Positions 26,492-40,731 of a stretch of 64,000 nucleotides of DNA are shown here, piece after piece. Under the pieces are notes generated by a model. It worked only from the letters and a program-made list of their open reading frames with translations, had not been told where the DNA came from and made no database searches. The stretch spans positions 25,792,001 to 25,856,000 of the forward strand of contig NC_088859.1 of assembly GCF_963853765.1 (NCBI RefSeq), read 5' to 3'. This DNA comes from Magallana gigas. Taxonomy: Eukaryota. Every line of letters begins with the position of its first letter. Position 1 is the stretch's first letter. The position numbers were made by a program, and so were the translations under genes.

Positions 26492-29400
26492 TTACACATT
26501 AATATCACAAAGAGGATTGAGGCTCTTCCTTCTCTCTTCAAACAGGAGGGATCTTCGCTTGGCTTTCTTTCCAGCAAAAGATTTCTGAAAAATAATTTCA
26601 AATATAATGGTTGAGTTTGTTTGCTCCCAGTTCACTTAATAGGGAAACTCACAGCTACGGGTATTTTCTCTAAAAGAATCTAAAATTTCCTTTTAAAAAA
26701 ATGCTAAAACAAATTATTAAACACCATTATCCTTGCCCTCACCTCTTCAAATGAAATAAATTAGTACTGTGGATTCATTAATATTCAAGGGTATCAATTT
26801 TCGTGGAAAAAGTGAAAATCACAGTTTCAAGGATACGTAAATTCGTGGCCAATGACCCTATCAATACAAAATGATAGTAGAAATTGCACTTCAATGAACA
26901 TTTCATTTCATGAATAAACTTAACAACGAAATCCATGAAAATTGGTATTCAGCGAATATTGATGAAACCATAGTATGAGTTGATGTATTAATAAAGTTCT
27001 TACTGGCACATGAGGGCTGTTCTCATCAGCAGAACTAAAATCGTGATTTTCGTTTTCCTTGTCAACTTCTGGACTGTGGAAATTCTGGTTGGCAAACTTC
27101 TTCTGGAGGGCCAGGGCAATCATTGAGGCGGGGTCAGCGGTGGGGTGGGACTGGACTTTGGACTTTAGTGGTGTACCCCCTGGTGACCTTCATTGATTTG
27201 AAACAAAAGTTTAATGAAAATCCAAACATCTGAACGAAACCCCCTGAGTGCATGATCTGACAGTGTAAATATATTAGACCAAGGGCCTTTTTTAAATATT
27301 GATTGCATACACAAACAAGTAACTCATTTGTTTTATTTCATATATAGGCTGTCCAAAATTAATTCTATGTTTAAAGTCACCCGGTCCATAGGTTTAGGAG
27401 TAATTGTTGTTTAAAAAGAAAGAAAAATTTTGAATTTTATTTCTTTCCAGTTTGATTTTACTTTTTGCAACTTAAATCTGTAGAAATTCAAAATGTTTAG
27501 GGCACATTATGGATTACACATTGGATGCCTAGAGATATTGTCCCTAAAACTGACAGGAATACTGTATTTGTATTAAAAAAATATTTATAAATGAACAAAA
27601 ATCACATTTGAAAATTTTAATTTTATTGCCCTTCCTCTTAGATTTGGTATTTTTAAGGTGATGTTAAACGTAACTTTAGACAGCCTTCCATTTGCAATTT
27701 AAGTCTTTAGTTTTTAATTGTACCTCTGGATAGATCTGAGTTTCACTGATCCCAGTCCTTTCAACACTTCAGACATGGTGGGAACCTTTGTTGTTGAGGC
27801 AGTTGGCACAACATCAGGAGTGTTTCTGTTTTCTACCCTGTCTTCTTCTATGTTCTCCAACTTCTACAATACACAGCATAAAAGACTAAAACATTTAGCA
27901 TAAAGACTACGACATACAGCACAAAGACTACAACACACAATATAAAGCACAAAGGCTACAACACACAATATAAAGCACAAAGACTACAATACACGGCACA
28001 AAGACTACAGCATACAGCACAAAGACTACAACACACAGCACAAAGACTATAATACACAGCACAAAAACTACAATACACAGCACCAAGACTACAGCATACA
28101 ACACAAAAACTACAATACACAGCACAAAGACTACAATACACAGCACAAAAACTACAACACACAGCACAAAGACTATGCCATACAGCACAATGGCAACAAA
28201 AACAAATCAAAGACTATACCAAACAAATCAAAGACTACAACAAACAAATATATATGCATGTATACCATGGTAAATTCCATTCATTGCACAATACACTGAA
28301 CAAAAGGAATAATTACTTACTGTATTCAATTACATACAAAATAATTTTTTCTATAAACAGTGACATCATTACCTTTCTTAACACTTCATCTAAGCTGGGT
28401 TCCTTCTTGACCGGTGTTGACGTGTTCAGCGGGGGAAGTGGGGGTGGTGGGGGAGGAGGGGGTGGGGCACAGGGCACTCCAGAAGTCTGGGGAGGTGTCT
28501 GTGCCACTGAGTTGGTATTCGATGGAGGCATCACTATATAAAACAAGAGAAAAATAAAGTGTTAACTTGGTCAATCCAATGCAGATATCTATAATCAAAT
28601 CAACTTTTGAAATCTATATGTTTTACTGACAGATCAATGAGATCAACTTTAAAGAAAATAAAATCCGAACCCCCTTCCCTATGAATAAATTTGTGCTGAT
28701 ACAAAGAACAATTCCCAATGCCAAAAAAGTTGATTTTTCCAAAATTTCCCAATTCAACTATAAATATTAATATTAACAATATATTGATATTAAAACAAAA
28801 CCACAGGCCATACAATTTGTTTACGATGAAACATTGTACAGTTAGACTAACTTGTTCACTTCCTCTTAGAATCAAAAAGAAACAAAACAATTACAATGTA
28901 TGTTGTCAAACACATGCTGTAAACAATCCAAACAAATCAACATCACACGTGATCATGACTGAGTTTAGGCGTGACACCTACACTGAGACCGGTTGATCTG
29001 CTCCTGGTTGATGACCAACATGGCGATCTGTTGTCGGAGACTGGACAGCTCGTCCTGTAGGGCGTTCAGTTTACTGGCAGCTTGGGGGTCAGAGGTCATG
29101 GAGACAGAGGAGATCATGGTGGAGTTCATCAGGGGCATGTCGTCCGGTCGAACAGTGAACAAGTCCTCCCCTGGTTCCCCCTCACCCTCCTCTTCTCCGT
29201 ACACACTCTCCAGTTCTGTGTCGCTCTCACCATCCTCTCTCTTAGCCCTGTTTAAAAATTGAGCAATGAAATCATGTATGTCAAAATGGAACAATTTCTA
29301 CATTTTCTATGAAGGAACATGAGAGCTTCAGTAGAGACCTGAATCGAATGAGGTTGTTGCCTAGGTCTTCCTCCACCCATAGTGGATCCCCCTCTGAGGT

Positions 29401-30423
29401 AGCGTTGGTACACAGAGAAAGGAAGGAGGAGTCACTGCCCCAGCTATCCTGTCTCTGCCGTCGGGGTCGAATCAAGTGTTGCTACAAGGACAGAGACAGC
29501 AATTCAAATCAAATTGGAGTTTAAAATATTGAAATTTGAACTTTGAACTTTCCAAAACTTAATGGCATCCAGTGTTGATAAAGAAATTTGCATGTTCATG
29601 TGCTGGATCCAAAATTAACAAATACATGTAGATTAATGGGCCAAAAATATCTCCTTTTTTCAGTGTACAAGACTAGAGGAAATGACACGTTAAAACATTT
29701 GAATTGGTAATACAGTATTTCTCTGCCTACAAGCAAGTTCAAACAATTTACAGTTACATATTTACAAAGACCCTTTAGTTTTCATTGTTGCAGGATCTTT
29801 GTCATAAAAAATTACCATTGGGTAAAATTTCTCTTAGTTGTACAAGAAGAATGTGTATTTACCTGGATTTTTAGTCTTTTTGGCGGCTTTGTTGGAATAG
29901 CTGTGGCAAGAATCCTGACCAAACTTCTGTGTCGGATGTCAGACCGCCACCTGACCCAGTTATGGATCATGCGTCGCCTTCTTTGGGTCACACTTACGTC
30001 CCATCTGTTACGAAGGGAGGCCCTCATATCTCTCTGTGCATCGCATCCTCGTACATATAGTAAATGTACATAGTCAGCCTGTTAAGACAAATAAGTTAAT
30101 ATTTCATTGAATCAAAAAGAAAATCTCATAATAATCTCAGAAGATATAATTATCTACATTATTTCAGTTATGAGAAACTACCAATTAGATATTGAATTAT
30201 TTTACTGTAAATATGTTACAGGTAATTGAAGTCAAGATCTCTATAACAAAAAATGTTCAAAAAACATTTTTTAAGTAGATTGATCCTAAATTTGATCTTT
30301 GATGTGAGAATCTGAAAATCGGCAGTGCAGCTTATTTTTTTAACTAACCAAATCATCTGCATCAACTCCTACATAATCCAGTATAACTCTCAGAATAGTA
30401 ACAGCATCATCTATAACATCCAT
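26492..30423 (-). CDS. MTFR1: Mitochondrial fission regulator (MTFR1/MTFR2/MTFR1L, FAM54 family), 8 coding exons, 425 aa
   Basis: Exons 30423-30349, 30078-29863, 29481-29339, 29247-28982, 28533-28373, 27863-27724, 27187-27004 and 26584-26492 total 1278 nt. All introns are GT-AG and phases match. Family motifs in order: MDVIDDAVTILRVILDYVGV, HRSLVRILATAIP, ASKLNALQDELSSLRQQIAMLV, poly-Pro, PTMSEVLKGLGSVKLRS, RSPGGTP, ADPASMIALALQKKF. The vertebrate paralog cannot be assigned, so the symbol denotes the family. Confidence 0.92.
26767..26973. mobile_element. TA-flanked MITE of the same terminal family, in the last MTFR intron
   Basis: TA|CTGTGGATTCATTAATATTC ... GAATATTGATGAAACCATAG|TA, with imperfect TIRs. 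Confidence 0.8.
27864..28250. repeat. About 21-bp minisatellite (consensus GCACAAAGACTACAATACACA), roughly 15-18 degenerate units, in MTFR intron 5
   Basis: Directly visible tandem units, two of them lengthened to about 28 bp. The last unit abuts the exon at 27863. Confidence 0.95.
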
Positions 30424-30873
30424 CTCAGGGTGCGTATGTCTGAAAATATAATTTTACCAAATGTTCTAATTATCTATCAATTCAATGACATACTGCTCAA
30501 GTTTACATATGTAATATTATTGCAAATTGGTAATCATAAAACTACTTATAGACATTGATGATGTTAATTTAAGAGAATGTCAATAATCTGATAATTTACA
30601 ACGATAAATGCAATTAATTTGAGAGTAAATGCAAAGTTACTCAAACAAGATTTGTAAAAAAAATATTTAAAATATGACAGGTTTACAACGCTCAATTATA
30701 ATTAATTTAGTCTATAAAGAAATCAAGAGTGCATAAACGTATATGAGATCAATTACTCAACATGGTCAAATTCAGGGCCAGATTAGACATATCCGACACC
30801 CCCCCCCCCCCATTAAACCAGCAAGATAAAGTATTGAAACTGTATCCTGCGACAAATCATGTACACTGATGAC

Positions 30874-31106
30874 ACTTACGTACTTCTAGAATAGATTTTT
30901 TGCTAACTACATTGAGTAAAGGGAGAAACATTACCAACAACCAGTTGAAGCTTCGGTTAGTTTGTAAACACCATGCCGCTTTCAGTTTAAAACTGGCTTC
31001 CGGCGACTGAATTCACCAATGAAATAACAGTATTTTCCTCATTAACCAATGAAAACGTTTGTCTGATTTGTGTACAACTCAAAAAGGTTTATTTCATGTG
31101 GTGAGT
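30874..31106. promoter_or_regulatory. Bidirectional promoter shared by MTFR and ARMC1
   Basis: A minus-strand donor GTAAGT (30879-30874) and a plus-strand donor GTGAGT (31101-31106) face away from each other and fit 5'UTR exons of each gene. An ETS/GABP-type CCGGAAG site is on the minus strand at 30997-31003. The ATGs are 1083 bp apart. Confidence 0.6.
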
Positions 31107-31506
31107 AAATATGCAATTTACTGCAGATTTTTGATTTGATCACATGCACAGAAATAATTTTTACCTCAATATAATATCTGTATAGCTGCTTCACATTTTC
31201 TGAATTTAAAATTGTCGCATAAAACGACGAATTGATCTCACTGAATGGGAAGGGGGGGGGGGGGTGCATGGTGGTGGATTTGAACATTTTGTTTATTTTA
31301 TATCTATTCGAATGTTTACTGTAAAAAGGCAATGAATTTTTTATAATTTGATAATATCATTGTAATGTCTGTGTTTAATTGTTAAAGTTTATTAAACGAT
31401 TGTCAAATGTACTGCAATTACTTTTATGTCTATTGATCAACTACTGGATTCAATTAACATCCATGCACATTTTAGATTGGCAGTGTCTGTGACAAGGTAT
31501 AACAGA

Positions 31507-34183
31507 ATGGCATCTGCGGACACAGTTCTAGTTATGAAAGGGATGGCTGCTGATCCATTGAAAAGGAAGCTTCTTTTAAAGGTGCATTTTTATATCATAA
31601 ATGTGCACGTGTCTTTCAAACACGGGCACTCCCCAGCTAATAAATTTTAAAACTAAATGACGAATGATATCTATAATTTATATATATATCTACCTTCTGT
31701 ACTATAGCATAGAGAGTAGACATGTAGATTACAGATATCGTTTGTCATTTACAAAATTAGGTGGGGCCCGAGCACCTATGCTTTCAAAGTGTTCATCATT
31801 ATAGACACTATATAGCTGATTATAAGGGCCTTTCTGACTCTGCAAATTATTCTCTCTGCAGTCAGTCTGCCTGTTCTTTCAACTCTTTTAAAAGTCTTTA
31901 CCATATCTTCCTCATCTTTGGCTAAGTTTCACGAAAACGGATTGAACTAAAGCTCACTCTAAAAATACATCTTGTAAATAATTTGATTTTATTATTTGCA
32001 GGATGCCACTTGCATGGGAGGGCTCATTATGGTGTTGTCCAATCCAGATCCAAAGATAATCATCTCAGCTTTAGAGGTATATTGATTATCCACTGCGTAG
32101 TAATCCAGGCTTATATTAAATAATAACTACCCTGGAAACCTTAAATTTTGCTAAATGAAAACACATTTTAGTATAAACCAGAAATTAAAATGATTTTACT
32201 GCACAAATGTTGTATCATTTTATATCTTCATGTACACAATTTGCATCAAAATTAATAAATGAACCATTGGATTCAAATGAATTTTTAATGGGTTTTTTTT
32301 TAGACTTTGATTTTGATGGCCGACACAAATGATCACAGAAGAGTTCTGAGAGATTTCATTGGAATGATGGAACAGCTAGAGACAATTATCAACAGGTGAC
32401 TAGAGATTTATAAACGTACAAGATGTACCGGTACTAAGATTATCAATAAATTAATAAAAACATAAATAATTTTAGTGAAAATATCTTAAAACTAAGAAAA
32501 TTTGCAAAAAGAAAGACATTTAGAATTGTTTTTCTGTGGAGAAATAATGCAGTTTTTATTTGTTTTACCATCATGAATATTATTTAATCATTGCAGTCAA
32601 AAAAAGTGTGATGCAAGGGTTCACAATCTTGCGGAGAAGCTATATGTGATGATAACAGAAACCAGCGAACCTCAGACGCCACTCAAAGATACCAGCAACT
32701 CCGTGCCCAATTCCAGGTATGCTGTCTCCTCTTCCTTGCAATGTTTTGTGCCATACATGTAGACCTAACTGGTAGACCATCATTTATAAAATTTTGTTGG
32801 GGGATGGAAAAGGGGGGAAACTCTAAGAGTTGTTTGTTTCATAATTCAAATGTCCTAGCATTGAAAATTAACATATCCATGTAAACAAGTAAAGTTACAT
32901 CTCCAACATCTATAAAGACATACTTTGTACAGACCTACTATGGGTAGTTAAAAAAAATACAAATATAGTTAAATACAAATCAAGTCGTTGTTTACTTTTG
33001 TCCTTATTATTTAAAAGGATTTTTTTTTTGGTCAATCCACAGAAAAAACAGTGCTTGCAAAAACAAAAGCCTCCAAGGTCACAGGACAAGACACATTACA
33101 CTACAGATCAGGGGTCTTCTGGACAAGGTATATAGCCTTATAAAACAGCAAAGTCTGTCAGGATATATATGCAACGCAAGTCATGTTAATATTGTAAATG
33201 GATCATTTACTGTGGGTGTTTTCTTTTATTGGCAGACAGATCGGGACGTTTTGATGCGACTTGTCTTACAAGTTAAAGGAGTAATAAGTGTGACCTTTGA
33301 CATGAACAAGAAACGATGCTTTCTGCGAGTCAAACCAGATATTAAACCAGAGGTATTTTGAAATTTTTTGTCCTGTATTTTCTGTATCTTGACAGATGGA
33401 ATTGCAGTTTAGCAATGTCTACTATCCAGCATAATTAACATTTACAATGTTCACATAATTGTGAATGTTTTCACTCAATTCTACCTTATACATGTATTAT
33501 ATATTATACACTATAGGTATAATACATATATGTTTTATTCTTTTACAGACTGTAGTGCAGGCTGTAGCCAAGTCCATGACAATGACAGCTCAACAGGTTG
33601 TCAAAGACGAATATGGAGCAGAAGTAAGTTTTTTTATCATCTTTCCTTGCTCTTCCTGTATTTACTTAAACATGTACATACTGTACATACATTAATAATT
33701 TTAATTACTCTTTAAACTTTCTACATTGATATTCAGAAAGTATATATACTTAATACCATGACTTCTTTAATCAGCGGTCATACTTTCACTATAGTACCCG
33801 GTAATCATCGATTGAAAATCGGCTTATCCCCCAGTTCGACTAGTCTAAGGATTTTCCCTGAATTTTGTCTGAAAATGAGCAATTCTGCCTTTGCCCCGCA
33901 TCGGCATATGCCCCAAAAAATACTGTAGCACACAGTCCTAAAACCAAGAGCCATATTCATTACAAGTCATTTTTCTTTCTCTTTTGTGAAGGTATTAGTG
34001 TCATTTGGTGCCAATCCCCAGGATATGGACAAAGAGAACACAACTCTTCCCGACTACCTCCCAGAAGATCCAGACAGTCCAAAAGCAAACAGCCACTCTG
34101 TCGCCCGGATCAAGAAGGATGATAACAAATCTGGCTGGCTTAGCTCTGCAGCAACCTTTATCACCAACTCATTCTACTGGTAG
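31507..34183 (+). CDS. ARMC1: Armadillo repeat-containing protein 1 (ARM repeat plus HMA-like domain), 8 coding exons, 276 aa
   Basis: Exons 31507-31581, 32002-32076, 32304-32395, 32597-32716, 33043-33127, 33236-33352, 33549-33623 and 33992-34183 total 831 nt, GT-AG and in phase. Peptides MAADPLKR, GGLIMVLSNPDP, LQVKGVISVTFDM, MTAQQVVKDEYGAE, TLPDYLPED and C-terminal GWLSSAATFITNSFYW match remembered human ARMC1 (LAADPLNR, KIKGVISFTFQM, MKAQQVVKSE, ELPDYLPED, SWLSTAANFLSRSFYW). Confidence 0.96.
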
Positions 34184-34883
34184 TCTGTCCATATATATTG
34201 TTTTGTGCCAACTTTCGAAGAAAATTTTTAACCATTATTTTGTATGAACTGAGCGATGACAGATGTATTTTATGTGTTATGATGTATTGATTGAACTGTA
34301 TAAAAGAGTCGTGAATGAAACAAGTCAAGAAATGTTCATTGTTGATAAAAAAAATTTATTGGTTTATACTATAAATTAAAATTTTAAAACAATCATTTGT
34401 CTATTGTATTTGTTTAATGTTTAAAAAAAAGATAAGGAGTAAGCCCCCAACAACACCATGTACTGTATACTGGTATGCACAAATTTATCATCCATATTTG
34501 GTATTTAGGAGCGAAACATAATGAATCTATACAACTTCACAGTACATGAATTTTTAGTTTCACAAATCTTCACTCATTTTCAAAGTTTAGAAGGATCAGG
34601 GTACAAATTGCAAAACTAAAAAAAAATTGGAGTGATAAAAAAGCTATTTCATTGGTTATTTCATCAAAAGCAAGTCTTAAAACATCACAATATATAAAAG
34701 ACTACATTATTTTATAAAATAATTGTAAAAAGATGATCTCAAGCTTGTTTTGAGTACAAAATTGTTAACATCAGTCATTGCTGAGCTTGATGGCTACATA
34801 TACACATGTATCCTGTAAAATTTATTCTTTTACTTAAAAAATTGTTCCTGAACTAGTTCTTGCATTTGAGTATTCAAAAGTCA

Positions 34884-37800: not shown

Positions 37801-40731
37801 GCCAACATGACTTAAGGCTCTGAAGATGTTATTGTTAAAATACCTGGGAATTTTTTATTAGATGTTTTTATAGAACTGATTACGGTACTGACTTTTATTA
37901 TCTAGGGTGCTTTCCATTTACGTTGCCTCGCCGATGACGTTATCGGGAAACAGTGACGTTAATGGAACGGTTGGCAATGTCACAATGATCCAACGATGAC
38001 GATTGCAGCTTTAAACTGATACTTATCTTAAAATTTGATCCAAAAAATTTGGCTATTTGCAGTTTTAATGTATTTCAATGTAGTAAGACAAATTATAGTT
38101 TTAGAAATACTGGTTTTGTAGAATATGATATCCTCGACGCCATATTGTTTCCTAATCGTCAATGGTATATTGCTTTGCCACAATCGCTCGCCTGCGACGC
38201 GCGTTCCAGCAATCGGCGACGAAGGCAACACCGGCAAATCCGGCGATGCCGGTTAAATGAAAAGCACCCCATGTTTCCCTAATAGCCCCCCTCAGAGAAA
38301 TGTCAGACTGATAAAAATCAAATACATACTAGAAAATGTATGAAAGTGAACATTTAAGGAGGGCTTTATTTTTACCCTTGATCACTATTATGGTTGAGCA
38401 AGATTTTTATTATCATTAGAATACCTTAGATGTCAGAACAATAAAAATCAGAGATATTTAAGCAAAACATTAAAGGAGGGCTACACTATTACTCTTAATT
38501 ACTTAGTCTGAACTAGAACAGACTATTGCTATAATCACTGAGACATACCTTGTTGTCCTCAAACACAGAGAAGACATGGGTGTACATATCCGACTGGTCA
38601 ATCACCACCTTCATGGCAGGGTCAGGCTTGGAGGGTGGATCACCAGCCTACATGAACATCAAACAAAACATTGCATCAACTGCATGTATTTCCCTTTAAA
38701 AAAGGCAATTTAGTGGAACCAGCACAGGTTTTCTGGTATTGTTATTTCAACTCATCGTTATGAAAATTACCTGTACTTTAAAAAAAAAAAATCTTCAAAG
38801 AGTTGTCAAAAAAAGAAGCCCCCTTCCCCAAAATACTTTTGCCCTGTGATGTTGTAATTTGTAGGCATTGAATTACACTTACTAGCACATGGATCTCTGA
38901 GTTGAGATAGTCCTGGTACACCTTGTTCAACATGTCCAGCACCTTAGAGATGGTGGACAAGGTGGCCTGGCTCTCAGAGGATAGCATGCTACGACAGACG
39001 TTTAGGATCACCCGCTTACTGTCATCCCTGGCCAGCAGGAACTTCGCCAACACATGCTGAAATTAAAATTACTCTGGTTACCGGTAGTATAAATTCATAC
39101 AGTTTTAGAAGTGATTTGTCATAGAGGTGAAGAATATGTCTGTCTATTTACTGACAGGCAGCTATAGACATTAAATTGAGGGTCACTAGATATCAAAAGG
39201 TCAATGATTGTCTAATTAGAGGTCCCTGGATGTCCATTCCTGATATCAGTTACACTCATGGTGGAATAAAACATGTGTGAAGTCATTTCTTTTAAAATAT
39301 TCATTTTGTAATTGTTATATGGTGTACCTTATCTGGAATCATTGTAACAATGGGCTCCAACTTCAGTTCCACGTACCATGAACATCCTGAAAATAAGAAA
39401 AAAGAAAATATCACTTACTTGATATTTTGAGTAACTCTGAGGTGTACATATGCTAAGGGTAACAGACATTTACAGAGGAAAAATAATTCAATGACATTTC
39501 TTACCTAATTTTGCATCAATGATAACATTTGGCTGAAAAACAACCCAGTTTGCAGAATCTGGTTTCGAGGCTAAGGATTTTTTCTGCTCACATCTTTTAT
39601 TCAATACTGGGTATGATGACCACAGATTTACATGATACATAATATTTAAATTCTAATTACAAAGGTGTTTAGATATTAGTTGATAGGATACAAAGTTCAC
39701 AGTTGTATTCCATTTTTGTCTGGCCACCTTGAATACCCAGTGCTAAAATGTAAAATTATGCAAATTAAATACAATTGTAACTGAAATTCAAATTATGTAC
39801 CAGTAGATTGAATTCTAATATAAAATCAATATATAATCATGGGTAGATCTAAAAGGGGGGGGGGGGGGTCGAGAGAGTCTGAACCCCCACCCCTTGGAAA
39901 ATATAAATTTCTTAAACTTACAAGTAAAGTTATAGAAAATATGCATCAGATCCCCTTGGCAAACTTAAATATCAGTAGAACACATTTATATATGTAAACA
40001 TATAATATTTTATGTGTAAGTCTGGATTAATTGTTCTAAATAAAACAGTACACTTACAAGGAAGCATAAGTCTGAAAGGCCTGATGGGTAGTGGAGACAC
40101 CACGGGATGGTGATAGCGGACAAATCCATCTGATTCACCGTCCAGATTAATGTCAAATATCACAGATGTCTGTTCAAGGAAAAATTATCAAATACATGTA
40201 CATGTATATACTGTAATTATACAAATGAACAATTACCCGGTATAGCTATTTTTGAGATCAATACGATGATTTCGCTACCCGAAAAGTAAAATAATCACTT
40301 CGTCAGGGACTTCATAACACTTGTTATATATTATTTTTTGCTATATCTGTGTTCGTACTAGACGAGTTTTACTATATTCAATTGGGCATGTTAAAAATTA
40401 TGCAAAATGAGGTTCAAGATATCATAAAAACTATCGATATATTAAATTGTTAATTATTTTTTCTTGCAATTTTTTATTTTACCTAAATTCCCACATATTC
40501 ATGACTTTTTCTTTGAAGAAAATTATTTAGATCATTACAAAAAAAAGTAGCTGGTTCTTAATTATAAAGTTTCTTACCCTTGAAGCTTGGTGGTGCACAA
40601 CAATAAGGTTGTTGACCACATTGATGGCGAATCTGCCACTCAATTCTAATCTCATTATGTCAGTTTTCCGTGCAGCCACATCTCTGAATAAATGAGGAAA
40701 CAATAAAATTTCCATAAATTGTCAGACTTAA

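What the first reader, a model, noticed from the sequence alone, without database searches (positions are those of the whole stretch)
26492..34183. ARMC1 and MTFR are head-to-head on a shared promoter, as in vertebrates
Seen in the sequence: the two ATGs are 1083 bp apart and divergent, and the outward-facing UTR donors are only about 220 bp apart. Recalled knowledge: human ARMC1 and MTFR1 are adjacent divergent genes on 8q13, and ARMC1 has been reported to act with MTFR proteins and MIRO at the outer mitochondrial membrane. Inference: finding the same pair in an apparent mollusc implies the linkage dates to the bilaterian ancestor. It would be an operon-like, co-transcribed module of two subunits of one mitochondrial-distribution complex, older than the MTFR1/2/1L split. 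I do not know whether the invertebrate conservation has been described.
Basis: partly seen in the sequence, partly recalled or inferred. Interest (0 to 1): 0.75.

Follow-up and report, generated by a model that had tools for sequence, protein, structure and literature searches.

The report
Ancient ARMC1–MTFR divergent gene pair
In this oyster genome the genes for two partner proteins that position mitochondria, ARMC1 and MTFR, start about 100 bases apart on opposite strands, and the same head-to-head pairing is kept in other molluscs, an annelid, a starfish, a feather star and a fish, so it probably dates back to early bilaterian animals.

Summary
The window comes from an oyster: its ARMC1 is 85% identical to that of Saccostrea. 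It carries a complete 9-exon MTFR gene (minus strand, 425 aa, stop at 26492) and a 9-exon ARMC1 gene (plus strand, 276 aa, stop at 34183). The ATGs are 1083 bp apart. Each gene is single-copy in the 564-Mb assembly.

RNA contigs and stranded reads confirm the splicing and the opposite strands. They place the mRNA 5' ends at about 30973 (MTFR) and 31071 (ARMC1), roughly 97 bp apart. This is a true bidirectional promoter, not an operon.

The same head-to-head pair occurs in a chiton, an abalone, a scallop, a tubeworm annelid, a crinoid, a starfish and a teleost. It is absent within 10 kb in a sea urchin and a sea cucumber. Parsimony therefore puts the linkage in the protostome–deuterostome ancestor.

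The core promoter has an ETS site and two CCAAT boxes 30 bp apart. The twin CCAAT recurs in four molluscs and the starfish.

Human work (2025) shows that MTFR is unstable without ARMC1, which gives a reason for co-regulation. This is a new member of a known class, the conserved divergent microsyntenic pairs. I found no published description of this linkage.

The parts
26492..26584 (-). MTFR last coding exon (stop TAA 26494-26492); the 3'UTR continues below and was not mapped
   Evidence: Frame and AG acceptor
27004..27187 (-). MTFR coding exon 8 (conserved C-terminal RSPGGTP...ALQKKFA block)
   Evidence: GT-AG and frame; homologous blocks in annelid, starfish, crinoid and fish loci
27724..27863 (-). 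MTFR coding exon 7 (VLKGLGSVKLRSI motif)
   Evidence: Pfam PF05308 positions 207-244. The X3 contig's loose end at 28373 continues with the first 12 bases of this exon
28373..28533 (-). MTFR coding exon 6 (proline-rich)
   Evidence: RNA joint 28531/3|28982 with a synonymous C>T at 28532 in the reads
28982..29247 (-). MTFR coding exon 5 (acidic stretch plus conserved helix KLNALQDELSSLRQQIA)
   Evidence: Pfam PF05308 at 32.6 bits; RNA joints on both sides
29339..29481 (-). MTFR coding exon 4 (D-P-L-W-V-E-E-D motif, which aligns by position with the MIRO-binding LADI region of human MTFR1L)
   Evidence: RNA joints 29247|29339 and 29481|29863; motif shared with scallop, chiton and abalone
29863..30078 (-). 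MTFR coding exon 3 (RSLVRILATAIP motif)
   Evidence: RNA contig 29863-30062 is contiguous; Pfam positions 12-41
30349..30439 (-). MTFR exon 2 with ATG at 30423
   Evidence: RNA joint 30439|30935; the N-terminal peptide is 69-73% identical to chiton and scallop. The 30349 donor is inferred from GT and frame and was not seen as a joint
30935..30973 (-). MTFR 5'UTR exon 1; mRNA 5' end at about 30973
   Evidence: X3 contig (depth 531) spliced 30439|30935 and ending at 30973 directly against Illumina adapter (tables 5 and 7)
30974..31070 (.). Shared core promoter between the two 5' ends (97 bp)
   Evidence: Bounded by the two adapter-abutted contig ends
30997..31003 (-). ETS/GABP-type site CCGGAAG (CTTCCGG on the + strand)
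   Evidence: Sequence; a core ACTTCCG sits at a similar place in scallop
31011..31054 (+). Twin CCAAT boxes (31016-31020 and 31046-31050) within a 14-nt direct repeat 30 bp apart
   Evidence: the repeat finder family D3. The same twin at 30-32 bp spacing and in the same orientation occurs in scallop, chiton, abalone and starfish
31071..31100 (+). ARMC1 5'UTR exon 1; mRNA 5' end at about 31071
   Evidence: X3 contig (depth 489) starts at 31071 directly after Illumina adapter and is spliced 31100|31476
31476..31581 (+). ARMC1 exon 2 with ATG at 31507
   Evidence: RNA joints; model
32002..32076 (+). ARMC1 coding exon
   Evidence: RNA joints in X1, X3 and X21
32304..32395 (+). ARMC1 coding exon
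   Evidence: RNA joints
32597..32716 (+). ARMC1 coding exon
   Evidence: RNA joints
33043..33127 (+). ARMC1 coding exon (start of the HMA-like domain)
   Evidence: RNA joints
33236..33352 (+). ARMC1 coding exon (HMA-like domain core)
   Evidence: RNA joints; representative search hits
33549..33623 (+). ARMC1 coding exon
   Evidence: RNA joints
33992..34183 (+). ARMC1 last coding exon with the conserved C-terminal tail ...NSFYW and stop
   Evidence: RNA joint 33623|33992; alignment

Best explanation
Two single-copy oyster genes, MTFR (minus strand) and ARMC1 (plus strand), are transcribed divergently from one compact TATA-less bidirectional promoter. Their mRNA 5' ends lie about 97 bp apart. 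Between them sit one ETS (GABP-type) site and two CCAAT (NF-Y-type) boxes 30 bp apart. Each gene then has a short non-coding first exon and a 5'UTR intron, which is why the ATGs are 1.1 kb apart. The head-to-head arrangement was inherited from the common ancestor of protostomes and deuterostomes. It has been retained in most lineages sampled, most likely because the two products are obligate partners: in human cells ARMC1 binds MTFR through its helical domain, assembles it with MIRO and TMEM11 on the outer mitochondrial membrane, and is required for MTFR stability. A break between the genes would uncouple their shared promoter elements and their matched output. Shown here: the gene models, the opposite-strand transcription, the close 5' ends, the single-copy status, and the recurrence of the pair in four phyla. 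Inferred: that NF-Y and ETS factors drive both genes, that the oyster proteins bind each other, and that selection for co-regulation is what preserved the linkage.
For: Gene models are complete and GT-AG throughout. Pfam PF05308 is above its cut-off. ARMC1 is 85% identical to Saccostrea ARMC1. RNA shows all ARMC1 coding introns, four MTFR introns and both 5'UTR introns as spliced joints. High-depth contigs abut Illumina adapter at 30973 and 31071. First mates lie on + over MTFR and on - over ARMC1 in two stranded poly-A libraries. Both genes are covered in all four runs. The genome holds one MTFR locus and one ARMC1 locus. Synteny: an MTFR gene lies on the opposite strand directly upstream of ARMC1 in Liolophura, Argopecten, Haliotis, Lamellibrachia, Myripristis, with a PDE gene beyond it as in mammals, Anneissia and Asterias. 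ATG-to-ATG distances are 0.47-5.3 kb. Twin CCAAT boxes at 30-32 bp spacing, in ARMC1 orientation, occur in 5 of 8 intergenic regions, whereas 0 of 2000 Markov-1 simulations reached 5. A GGTAAATTCAAC-like element is conserved in three other molluscs at the position of the oyster ARMC1 5' end. The ARMC1 residues that contact MTFR in the human model (D27, D37; D37R abolishes MTFR binding and stability) are invariant from oyster to mammal (PMC11980836). Overexpressing any MTFR destabilises the endogenous MTFRs, so stoichiometry matters (PMC11980836). Both genes are in the set kept by honeybee and vertebrates but lost from fly and nematode (PMC2656531).
Against: The pair is not adjacent in Strongylocentrotus, where the upstream neighbour is a DEAD/KH helicase, nor within 10 kb in Holothuria. 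Linkage is therefore dispensable in at least one lineage. One Haliotis assembly (L002) shows no MTFR within 10 kb, probably because of an insertion. A hemipteran with a weak ARMC1 homologue has no MTFR nearby. The 5' ends come from contig and fragment ends, not from cap-selected data. Co-expression was seen in only four runs. The CCAAT spacing window was chosen after seeing the data, and twin CCAAT boxes are a common promoter layout, so their recurrence could be convergent. Annelid, crinoid and fish lack the twin. No transcription-factor binding or protein binding was tested in oyster.
Confidence: 0.72

Rival explanations
1. The adjacency is ancestral but neutral. It is a leftover of slow genome rearrangement in these lineages, with no selection on the linkage itself.
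For: Molluscs, annelids, echinoderms and vertebrates are known for conservative genomes. The pair was lost without obvious consequence in sea urchin and sea cucumber. Intergenic length varies tenfold (0.47-5.3 kb).
Against: The adjacency survives with strict 5'-5' orientation and no intervening gene in 8 sampled genomes from 4 phyla. Irimia et al. found that retention in four or more major lineages has a false-positive rate below 0.0002 per pair and is enriched for 5'-5' co-expressed pairs (PMC3514665). The products are obligate partners (PMC11980836). Promoter elements are shared.
Confidence: 0.15
2. The linkage is kept by a regulatory-block constraint. Enhancers for one gene lie in the introns of the other, rather than the genes sharing a core promoter.
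For: This is a known cause of conserved microsynteny (PMC3514665). In vertebrates the intergenic gap is larger, so a strict shared core promoter may not hold everywhere.
Against: Neither gene is a developmental regulator. The oyster introns are short (90-500 bp). The 5' ends are 97 bp apart. The conserved non-coding elements found here lie in the core promoter, not in introns.
Confidence: 0.1
3. The two genes form an operon-like unit, co-transcribed as one RNA.
For: None beyond their proximity.
Against: The genes are on opposite strands. Stranded reads show opposite polarity. The separate mRNAs have distinct first exons that end against adapters at 30973 and 31071.
Confidence: 0.01

Closest known systems
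Human/vertebrate ARMC1-MTFR1 neighbourhood (8q13; PDE7A-MTFR1-ARMC1)
   Same: Same two gene families, same 5'-5' orientation, no gene between them. A teleost shows PDE - MTFR(-) - ARMC1(+). Cattle have ARMC1 at 31.70-31.72 Mb and PDE7A at 31.80-31.91 Mb on BTA14, and MTFR1 is listed within the surrounding 30.01-32.98 Mb window (PMC10486602).
   Different: Vertebrates have three MTFR paralogues and often a second ARMC1-like gene, whereas the oyster has one of each. From my memory, not checked here, the human gene starts are about 10 kb apart, so the human pair may not meet the <1 kb bidirectional-promoter definition. In oyster the 5' ends are 97 bp apart.
Conserved ancestral microsyntenic pairs (CAMPs) with bidirectional promoters, e.g. 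HSPD1-HSPE1 and HADHA-HADHB (Irimia et al. 2012, PMC3514665)
   Same: Unrelated genes in 5'-5' orientation with a short intergenic distance, conserved across four or more animal phyla. The products are subunits or partners in one mitochondrial assembly.
   Different: I could not check whether ARMC1-MTFR is among the 595 published pairs, because no supplement is held. The functional link between the two proteins was only reported in 2025. The pair is absent from fly and nematode because both genes were lost there.
ARMC1-MIRO-MTFR-TMEM11 complex (PMC11980836)
   Same: Oyster ARMC1 keeps the helical domain with D27 and D37, the HMA-like domain and the C-terminal tail. Oyster MTFR keeps the N-terminal helix, the RSxVR block, a D-x-L-W motif at the place of the MIRO-binding LADI motif, the central helix and the C-terminal blocks.
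   Different: Human D49 is serine in all lophotrochozoans examined. No binding was tested for the oyster proteins.

Membership tests
MTFR (Pfam PF05308, Mito_fiss_reg) | Match to the family profile above the curated cut-off | tested here: met
   32.6 bits against 26.3 on the exon-5 piece, with collinear hits at profile positions 12-41 and 207-244 on other exons. 29.4 bits in the whole-genome scan.
MTFR (Pfam PF05308, Mito_fiss_reg) | Complete open reading frame with the conserved blocks in order (N-terminal helix, RSxVR, DxLW, central helix, VLKGL..VKLR, C-terminal ALxKKFA) | tested here: met
   425-aa model, all GT-AG. The blocks align with chiton, scallop, abalone, annelid, starfish, crinoid and fish genes.
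ARMC1 orthologue | Full-length similarity to annotated ARMC1 with the three-part layout (helical/Arm domain, HMA-like domain, C-terminal ...SFYW tail) | tested here: met
   276 aa, 85% identical to Saccostrea ARMC1 and aligned end to end with mammal, fish and echinoderm ARMC1. It is the only locus in the genome.
ARMC1 orthologue | MTFR-contact aspartates (human D27, D37, D49) | tested here: inconclusive
   D27 and D37 are invariant. D49 is Ser in oyster and all lophotrochozoans. Binding itself was not tested.
Bidirectional (head-to-head) promoter pair | Divergent transcription with TSSs less than 1 kb apart | tested here: met
   Adapter-abutted contig ends at 30973 (-) and 31071 (+). The 5'UTR introns are spliced. 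Stranded reads show opposite polarity. The data are not cap-selected.
Bidirectional (head-to-head) promoter pair | Correlated expression of the two genes | tested here: inconclusive
   Both genes are covered in all four runs at levels within a few-fold of each other. Four runs are too few for a correlation.
Conserved ancestral microsyntenic pair (Irimia et al. 2012 criterion: at least 4 major lineages, at most 4 intervening genes) | Adjacency in at least four major metazoan lineages | tested here: met
   Mollusca (4 genomes including the window), Annelida, Echinodermata (crinoid, starfish) and Chordata (teleost), with no intervening gene and the same orientation.
Operon / co-transcribed unit | Both genes on one primary transcript | tested here: not met
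   Opposite strands and separate 5' ends.

The most novel reading that the evidence does not exclude
ARMC1 and MTFR form a two-gene module whose shared core promoter architecture, and not just the adjacency, has been inherited since before the protostome-deuterostome split. That architecture is twin NF-Y boxes 30 bp apart between the two start sites. On this reading the module is held together by selection for matched dosage of an obligate chaperone-client pair, and the vertebrate paralogue sets (ARMC1/ARMC1-like and MTFR1/2/1L) are remnants of duplicated copies of this module.
Probability: 0.3. Interest if true: 0.7.

Novelty: new member of a known kind. Interest (0 to 1): 0.5.

Why it matters
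The physical and functional link between ARMC1 and the MTFR proteins was first reported in 2025, and that paper says nothing about gene order. Here the two genes prove to have been kept head-to-head in four animal phyla. In an oyster their start sites are about 100 bp apart. That is independent evolutionary evidence that the partnership is ancient and dosage-sensitive. It shows that conserved divergent pairs can point to unrecognised protein partners. It also offers a small promoter (under 170 bp, with ETS and twin CCAAT boxes) for testing how co-regulation of a mitochondrial-distribution complex is wired. The break in sea urchins and sea cucumbers is a natural experiment for what happens when the genes are separated.

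Tried and rejected
- **Dreissena ARMC1 (P0010):** the look-up found no record, because only the longest isoform is indexed.
- **Watersipora (bryozoan):** a minus-strand 375-aa gene lies 6.3 kb upstream of ARMC1. It starts with an MTFR-like peptide, but the profile match is not significant (E = 6.3) and the rest of the gene lies outside the locus. I count this as inconclusive.
- **Ranatra (hemipteran):** the ARMC1 homologue is weak and no MTFR lies within 10 kb. Not informative.
- **Haliotis cracherodii (L002):** the upstream sequence diverges from the other Haliotis assembly at about 850 bp before the ATG, and no MTFR exons were found within 10 kb. This is probably an insertion or an assembly difference.
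- **Irimia et al. 2012 supplement:** not held, so prior listing of the pair could not be checked.
- **Earlier scan notes:** none for this place.
- **ETS site as the conserved element:** rejected. Next to the twin CCAAT boxes it is shared only with scallop.
- **Complex prediction:** not run. The two oyster proteins are spliced products with no single reference, and I did not type long sequences.
- **Cnidarians, amphioxus, hemichordates and the vertebrate ARMC1-like loci:** not examined.
Full report
**What is in the window**

The region 26492-34183 holds two complete protein-coding genes on opposite strands.

On the plus strand, an ARMC1 gene has its ATG at 31507 and its stop codon at 34181-34183. 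It has eight coding exons, all with GT-AG borders, and encodes 276 residues.

On the minus strand, an MTFR gene has its ATG at 30423 and its stop at 26494-26492. It also has eight coding exons, all GT-AG, and encodes 425 residues.

Identity is secure for both genes:
- **MTFR.** One MTFR exon alone passes the Pfam gathering score for PF05308, Mito_fiss_reg (32.6 against 26.3 bits). Two other exons give collinear weaker hits.
- **ARMC1.** The model is 85% identical over its full length to the annotated ARMC1 of the oyster Saccostrea cucullata and 45-61% identical to other molluscs. The window is therefore from an oyster.

A six-frame scan of the window's own 564-Mb assembly finds only this one MTFR locus and only this one ARMC1 locus. 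These are the single, pre-duplication orthologues of the vertebrate families.

**Transcription**

I laid two sets of RNA-derived contigs and two stranded poly-A raw-read libraries on 28300-34250.

All seven ARMC1 coding introns appear as spliced joints at the modelled borders. So do the MTFR introns 28534-28981, 29248-29338 and 29482-29862. A loose end at 28373 continues with the first bases of the next MTFR exon.

First mates lie on the plus strand over MTFR exons and on the minus strand over ARMC1 exons. The two RNAs therefore have opposite polarity.

Both genes have a short non-coding first exon followed by a 5'UTR intron:
- MTFR exon 1 is 30935-30973, spliced to 30439.
- ARMC1 exon 1 is 31071-31100, spliced to 31476.

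In the deepest run, the contigs carrying these joints (word depth about 500) end directly against Illumina adapter at 30973 and 31071. Many cDNA fragments therefore terminate at those positions, which I read as the mRNA 5' ends. They are 97 bp apart.

The MTFR donor (about 30878) is wrong: it is at 30935, so the two donors are about 164 bp apart, not 220.

This is a bidirectional promoter, not an operon.

**The core promoter**

Three elements lie between the two 5' ends:
- two CCAAT boxes at 31016 and 31046;
- the 14-nt direct repeat, ATT(C/A)ACCAATGAAA, 30 bp apart, in which those boxes are embedded.

There is no TATA box between the starts. The region is AT-rich and is not a CpG island.

From general knowledge, NF-Y (CCAAT) and GABP sites are the motifs most enriched in animal bidirectional promoters. 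Their use here is an inference.

**Is the linkage conserved?**

I collected ARMC1 proteins from other animals. I then fetched the genomic neighbourhood of twelve of them, with 10 kb on each side.

An MTFR gene lies directly upstream of ARMC1, on the opposite strand, with no gene between, in the following species:

| Species | Group | How MTFR was identified | ATG-to-ATG distance |
|---|---|---|---|
| Liolophura sinensis | chiton | PF05308 on record | 2.7 kb |
| Argopecten irradians | scallop | PF05308 on record | 3.0 kb |
| Haliotis (one assembly) | abalone | five collinear MTFR exons by tblastn and profile | 1.55 kb |
| Lamellibrachia satsuma | annelid | PF05308 on record | 0.47 kb |
| Anneissia japonica | crinoid | PF05308 on record | 5.3 kb |
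| Asterias rubens | starfish | four collinear profile hits, E 1e-7 to 8e-17 | 2.2 kb |
| Myripristis murdjan | teleost | collinear profile hits; a PDE gene lies beyond it, as in the mammalian PDE7A-MTFR1-ARMC1 order | 2.1 kb |

The pair is not kept in two echinoderms:
- **Strongylocentrotus purpuratus.** The upstream neighbour is a KH/DEAD helicase.
- **Holothuria leucospilota.** No MTFR lies within 10 kb.

Both of these share an amino-acid-transporter gene downstream of ARMC1. That points to one break in their common ancestor.

A bryozoan, a hemipteran and a second abalone assembly were inconclusive or negative.

The arrangement is present with identical orientation in lophotrochozoans, in ambulacrarians and in a vertebrate. 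The most parsimonious reading is that it existed in the last common ancestor of protostomes and deuterostomes. Non-bilaterians were not tested.

**Conserved promoter architecture**

A same-strand pair of CCAAT boxes, in ARMC1 orientation, occurs in the intergenic region of five genomes. The spacing is 30 bp in oyster, scallop, chiton and starfish, and 32 bp in abalone.

In 2000 first-order Markov simulations of the eight intergenic regions, no more than three regions ever showed such a twin, against five observed. The flanking 24-64 kb of each locus holds only one or two such twins in total. The spacing window was chosen after seeing the data, so this test is optimistic.

In scallop, chiton and abalone a GGTAAATTCAAC-like element follows the second box at the position where the oyster ARMC1 mRNA begins.

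Adjacent to the twin boxes, the ETS site has a counterpart only in scallop. Annelid, crinoid and fish lack the twin boxes.

**Why the genes may be kept together**

McKenna-type work in human cells (PMC11980836) established the following:
- The ARMC1 helical domain binds two conserved MTFR helices.
- ARMC1 assembles one MTFR with one MIRO and TMEM11.
- MTFR proteins are degraded without ARMC1.
- The D37R mutation in ARMC1 abolishes this.
- Overexpressing one MTFR destabilises the others, so ARMC1 is limiting.

That paper states that no link between the proteins had been described before, and it does not mention gene order.

In my alignment the equivalents of D27 and D37 are invariant from oyster to mammal. 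D49 is serine in lophotrochozoans.

Oyster MTFR keeps the RSxVR block, a D-x-L-W motif at the place of the MIRO-binding LADI motif, and the central and C-terminal helices.

Both genes also share a phylogenetic profile: they are retained in honeybee and vertebrates and lost in fly and nematode (PMC2656531).

A shared promoter that yields matched amounts of a stabiliser and its client is therefore a plausible selective reason for the linkage. This step is inference.

**Comparison with what is known**

Deeply conserved 5'-5' pairs of unrelated genes are an established class. Irimia et al. listed 595 such pairs, enriched for divergent orientation, short distance and co-expression, with HSPD1-HSPE1 and HADHA-HADHB as examples (PMC3514665).

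ARMC1-MTFR fits that class and meets its criterion of four or more major lineages. I could not check whether it is in their list. Full-text searches found no paper describing the linkage.

I rate it a new member of a known kind.

**Limits**

- The 5' ends are not cap-selected.
- Co-expression rests on four runs.
- The flanks were capped at 10 kb.
- No binding or reporter test was possible.
- Complex prediction was not run, because the spliced proteins have no single reference.

Noticed in passing
window 30404-30429 (+), joined to 31476: One RNA-type contig (run X1, depth 14) joins a 25-nt piece ending at a good plus-strand donor (CAGG|GTGCGT, about 30429) to the ARMC1 exon-2 acceptor. This suggests an alternative ARMC1 first exon lying antisense inside the MTFR start-codon exon. 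The same run has an unspliced 938-nt contig over 29636-30573. Evidence is thin: one contig with a short side.
   Followed up: partly
window 30799-30811 and 31252-31264: A C13 run and a G13 run flank the core promoter as a perfect inverted pair. Each gene therefore has a G13 tract on its sense strand about 165-195 nt downstream of its 5' end, inside its first intron. Runs of 10 or more G or C occur 13 times in the 64 kb, so two mirrored ones within 0.5 kb is a mild excess. One contig shows a 6-base length difference at 31252.
   Followed up: partly
window 27864-28246; L004:1612-4944: The oyster MTFR intron that ends at exon 7 is filled by a 21-bp minisatellite (about 18 copies) abutting the acceptor. 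The scallop MTFR gene has a 62-bp x 54-copy array (96% matches) in the intron next to the homologous upstream exon, and its unit weakly resembles the end of that exon.
   Followed up: partly
window 38781-39062 (-), probably extending to about 45750: An exon matching Pfam RMC1_C (Regulator of MON1-CCZ1 complex, 32.2 bits against a 26.9 cut-off) shows that an RMC1-like gene lies tail-to-tail downstream of ARMC1. In scallop the downstream neighbour is instead a PI3K p85-like gene, and in urchin and sea cucumber an amino-acid transporter.
   Followed up: no
window 30762-30784 and 32500-32525: Reads and a contig join 30762 to 32500 on opposite strands, and several reads run on from 30784 into unrelated sequence. 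This probably reflects copies of a short repeat elsewhere in the genome rather than a feature of these genes.
   Followed up: no
L005 and L008 (Holothuria, Strongylocentrotus): In both echinozoans ARMC1 is followed by a convergent Aa_trans (amino-acid transporter) gene. This is a local synteny that replaces the MTFR linkage and suggests a single rearrangement in their common ancestor.
   Followed up: partly
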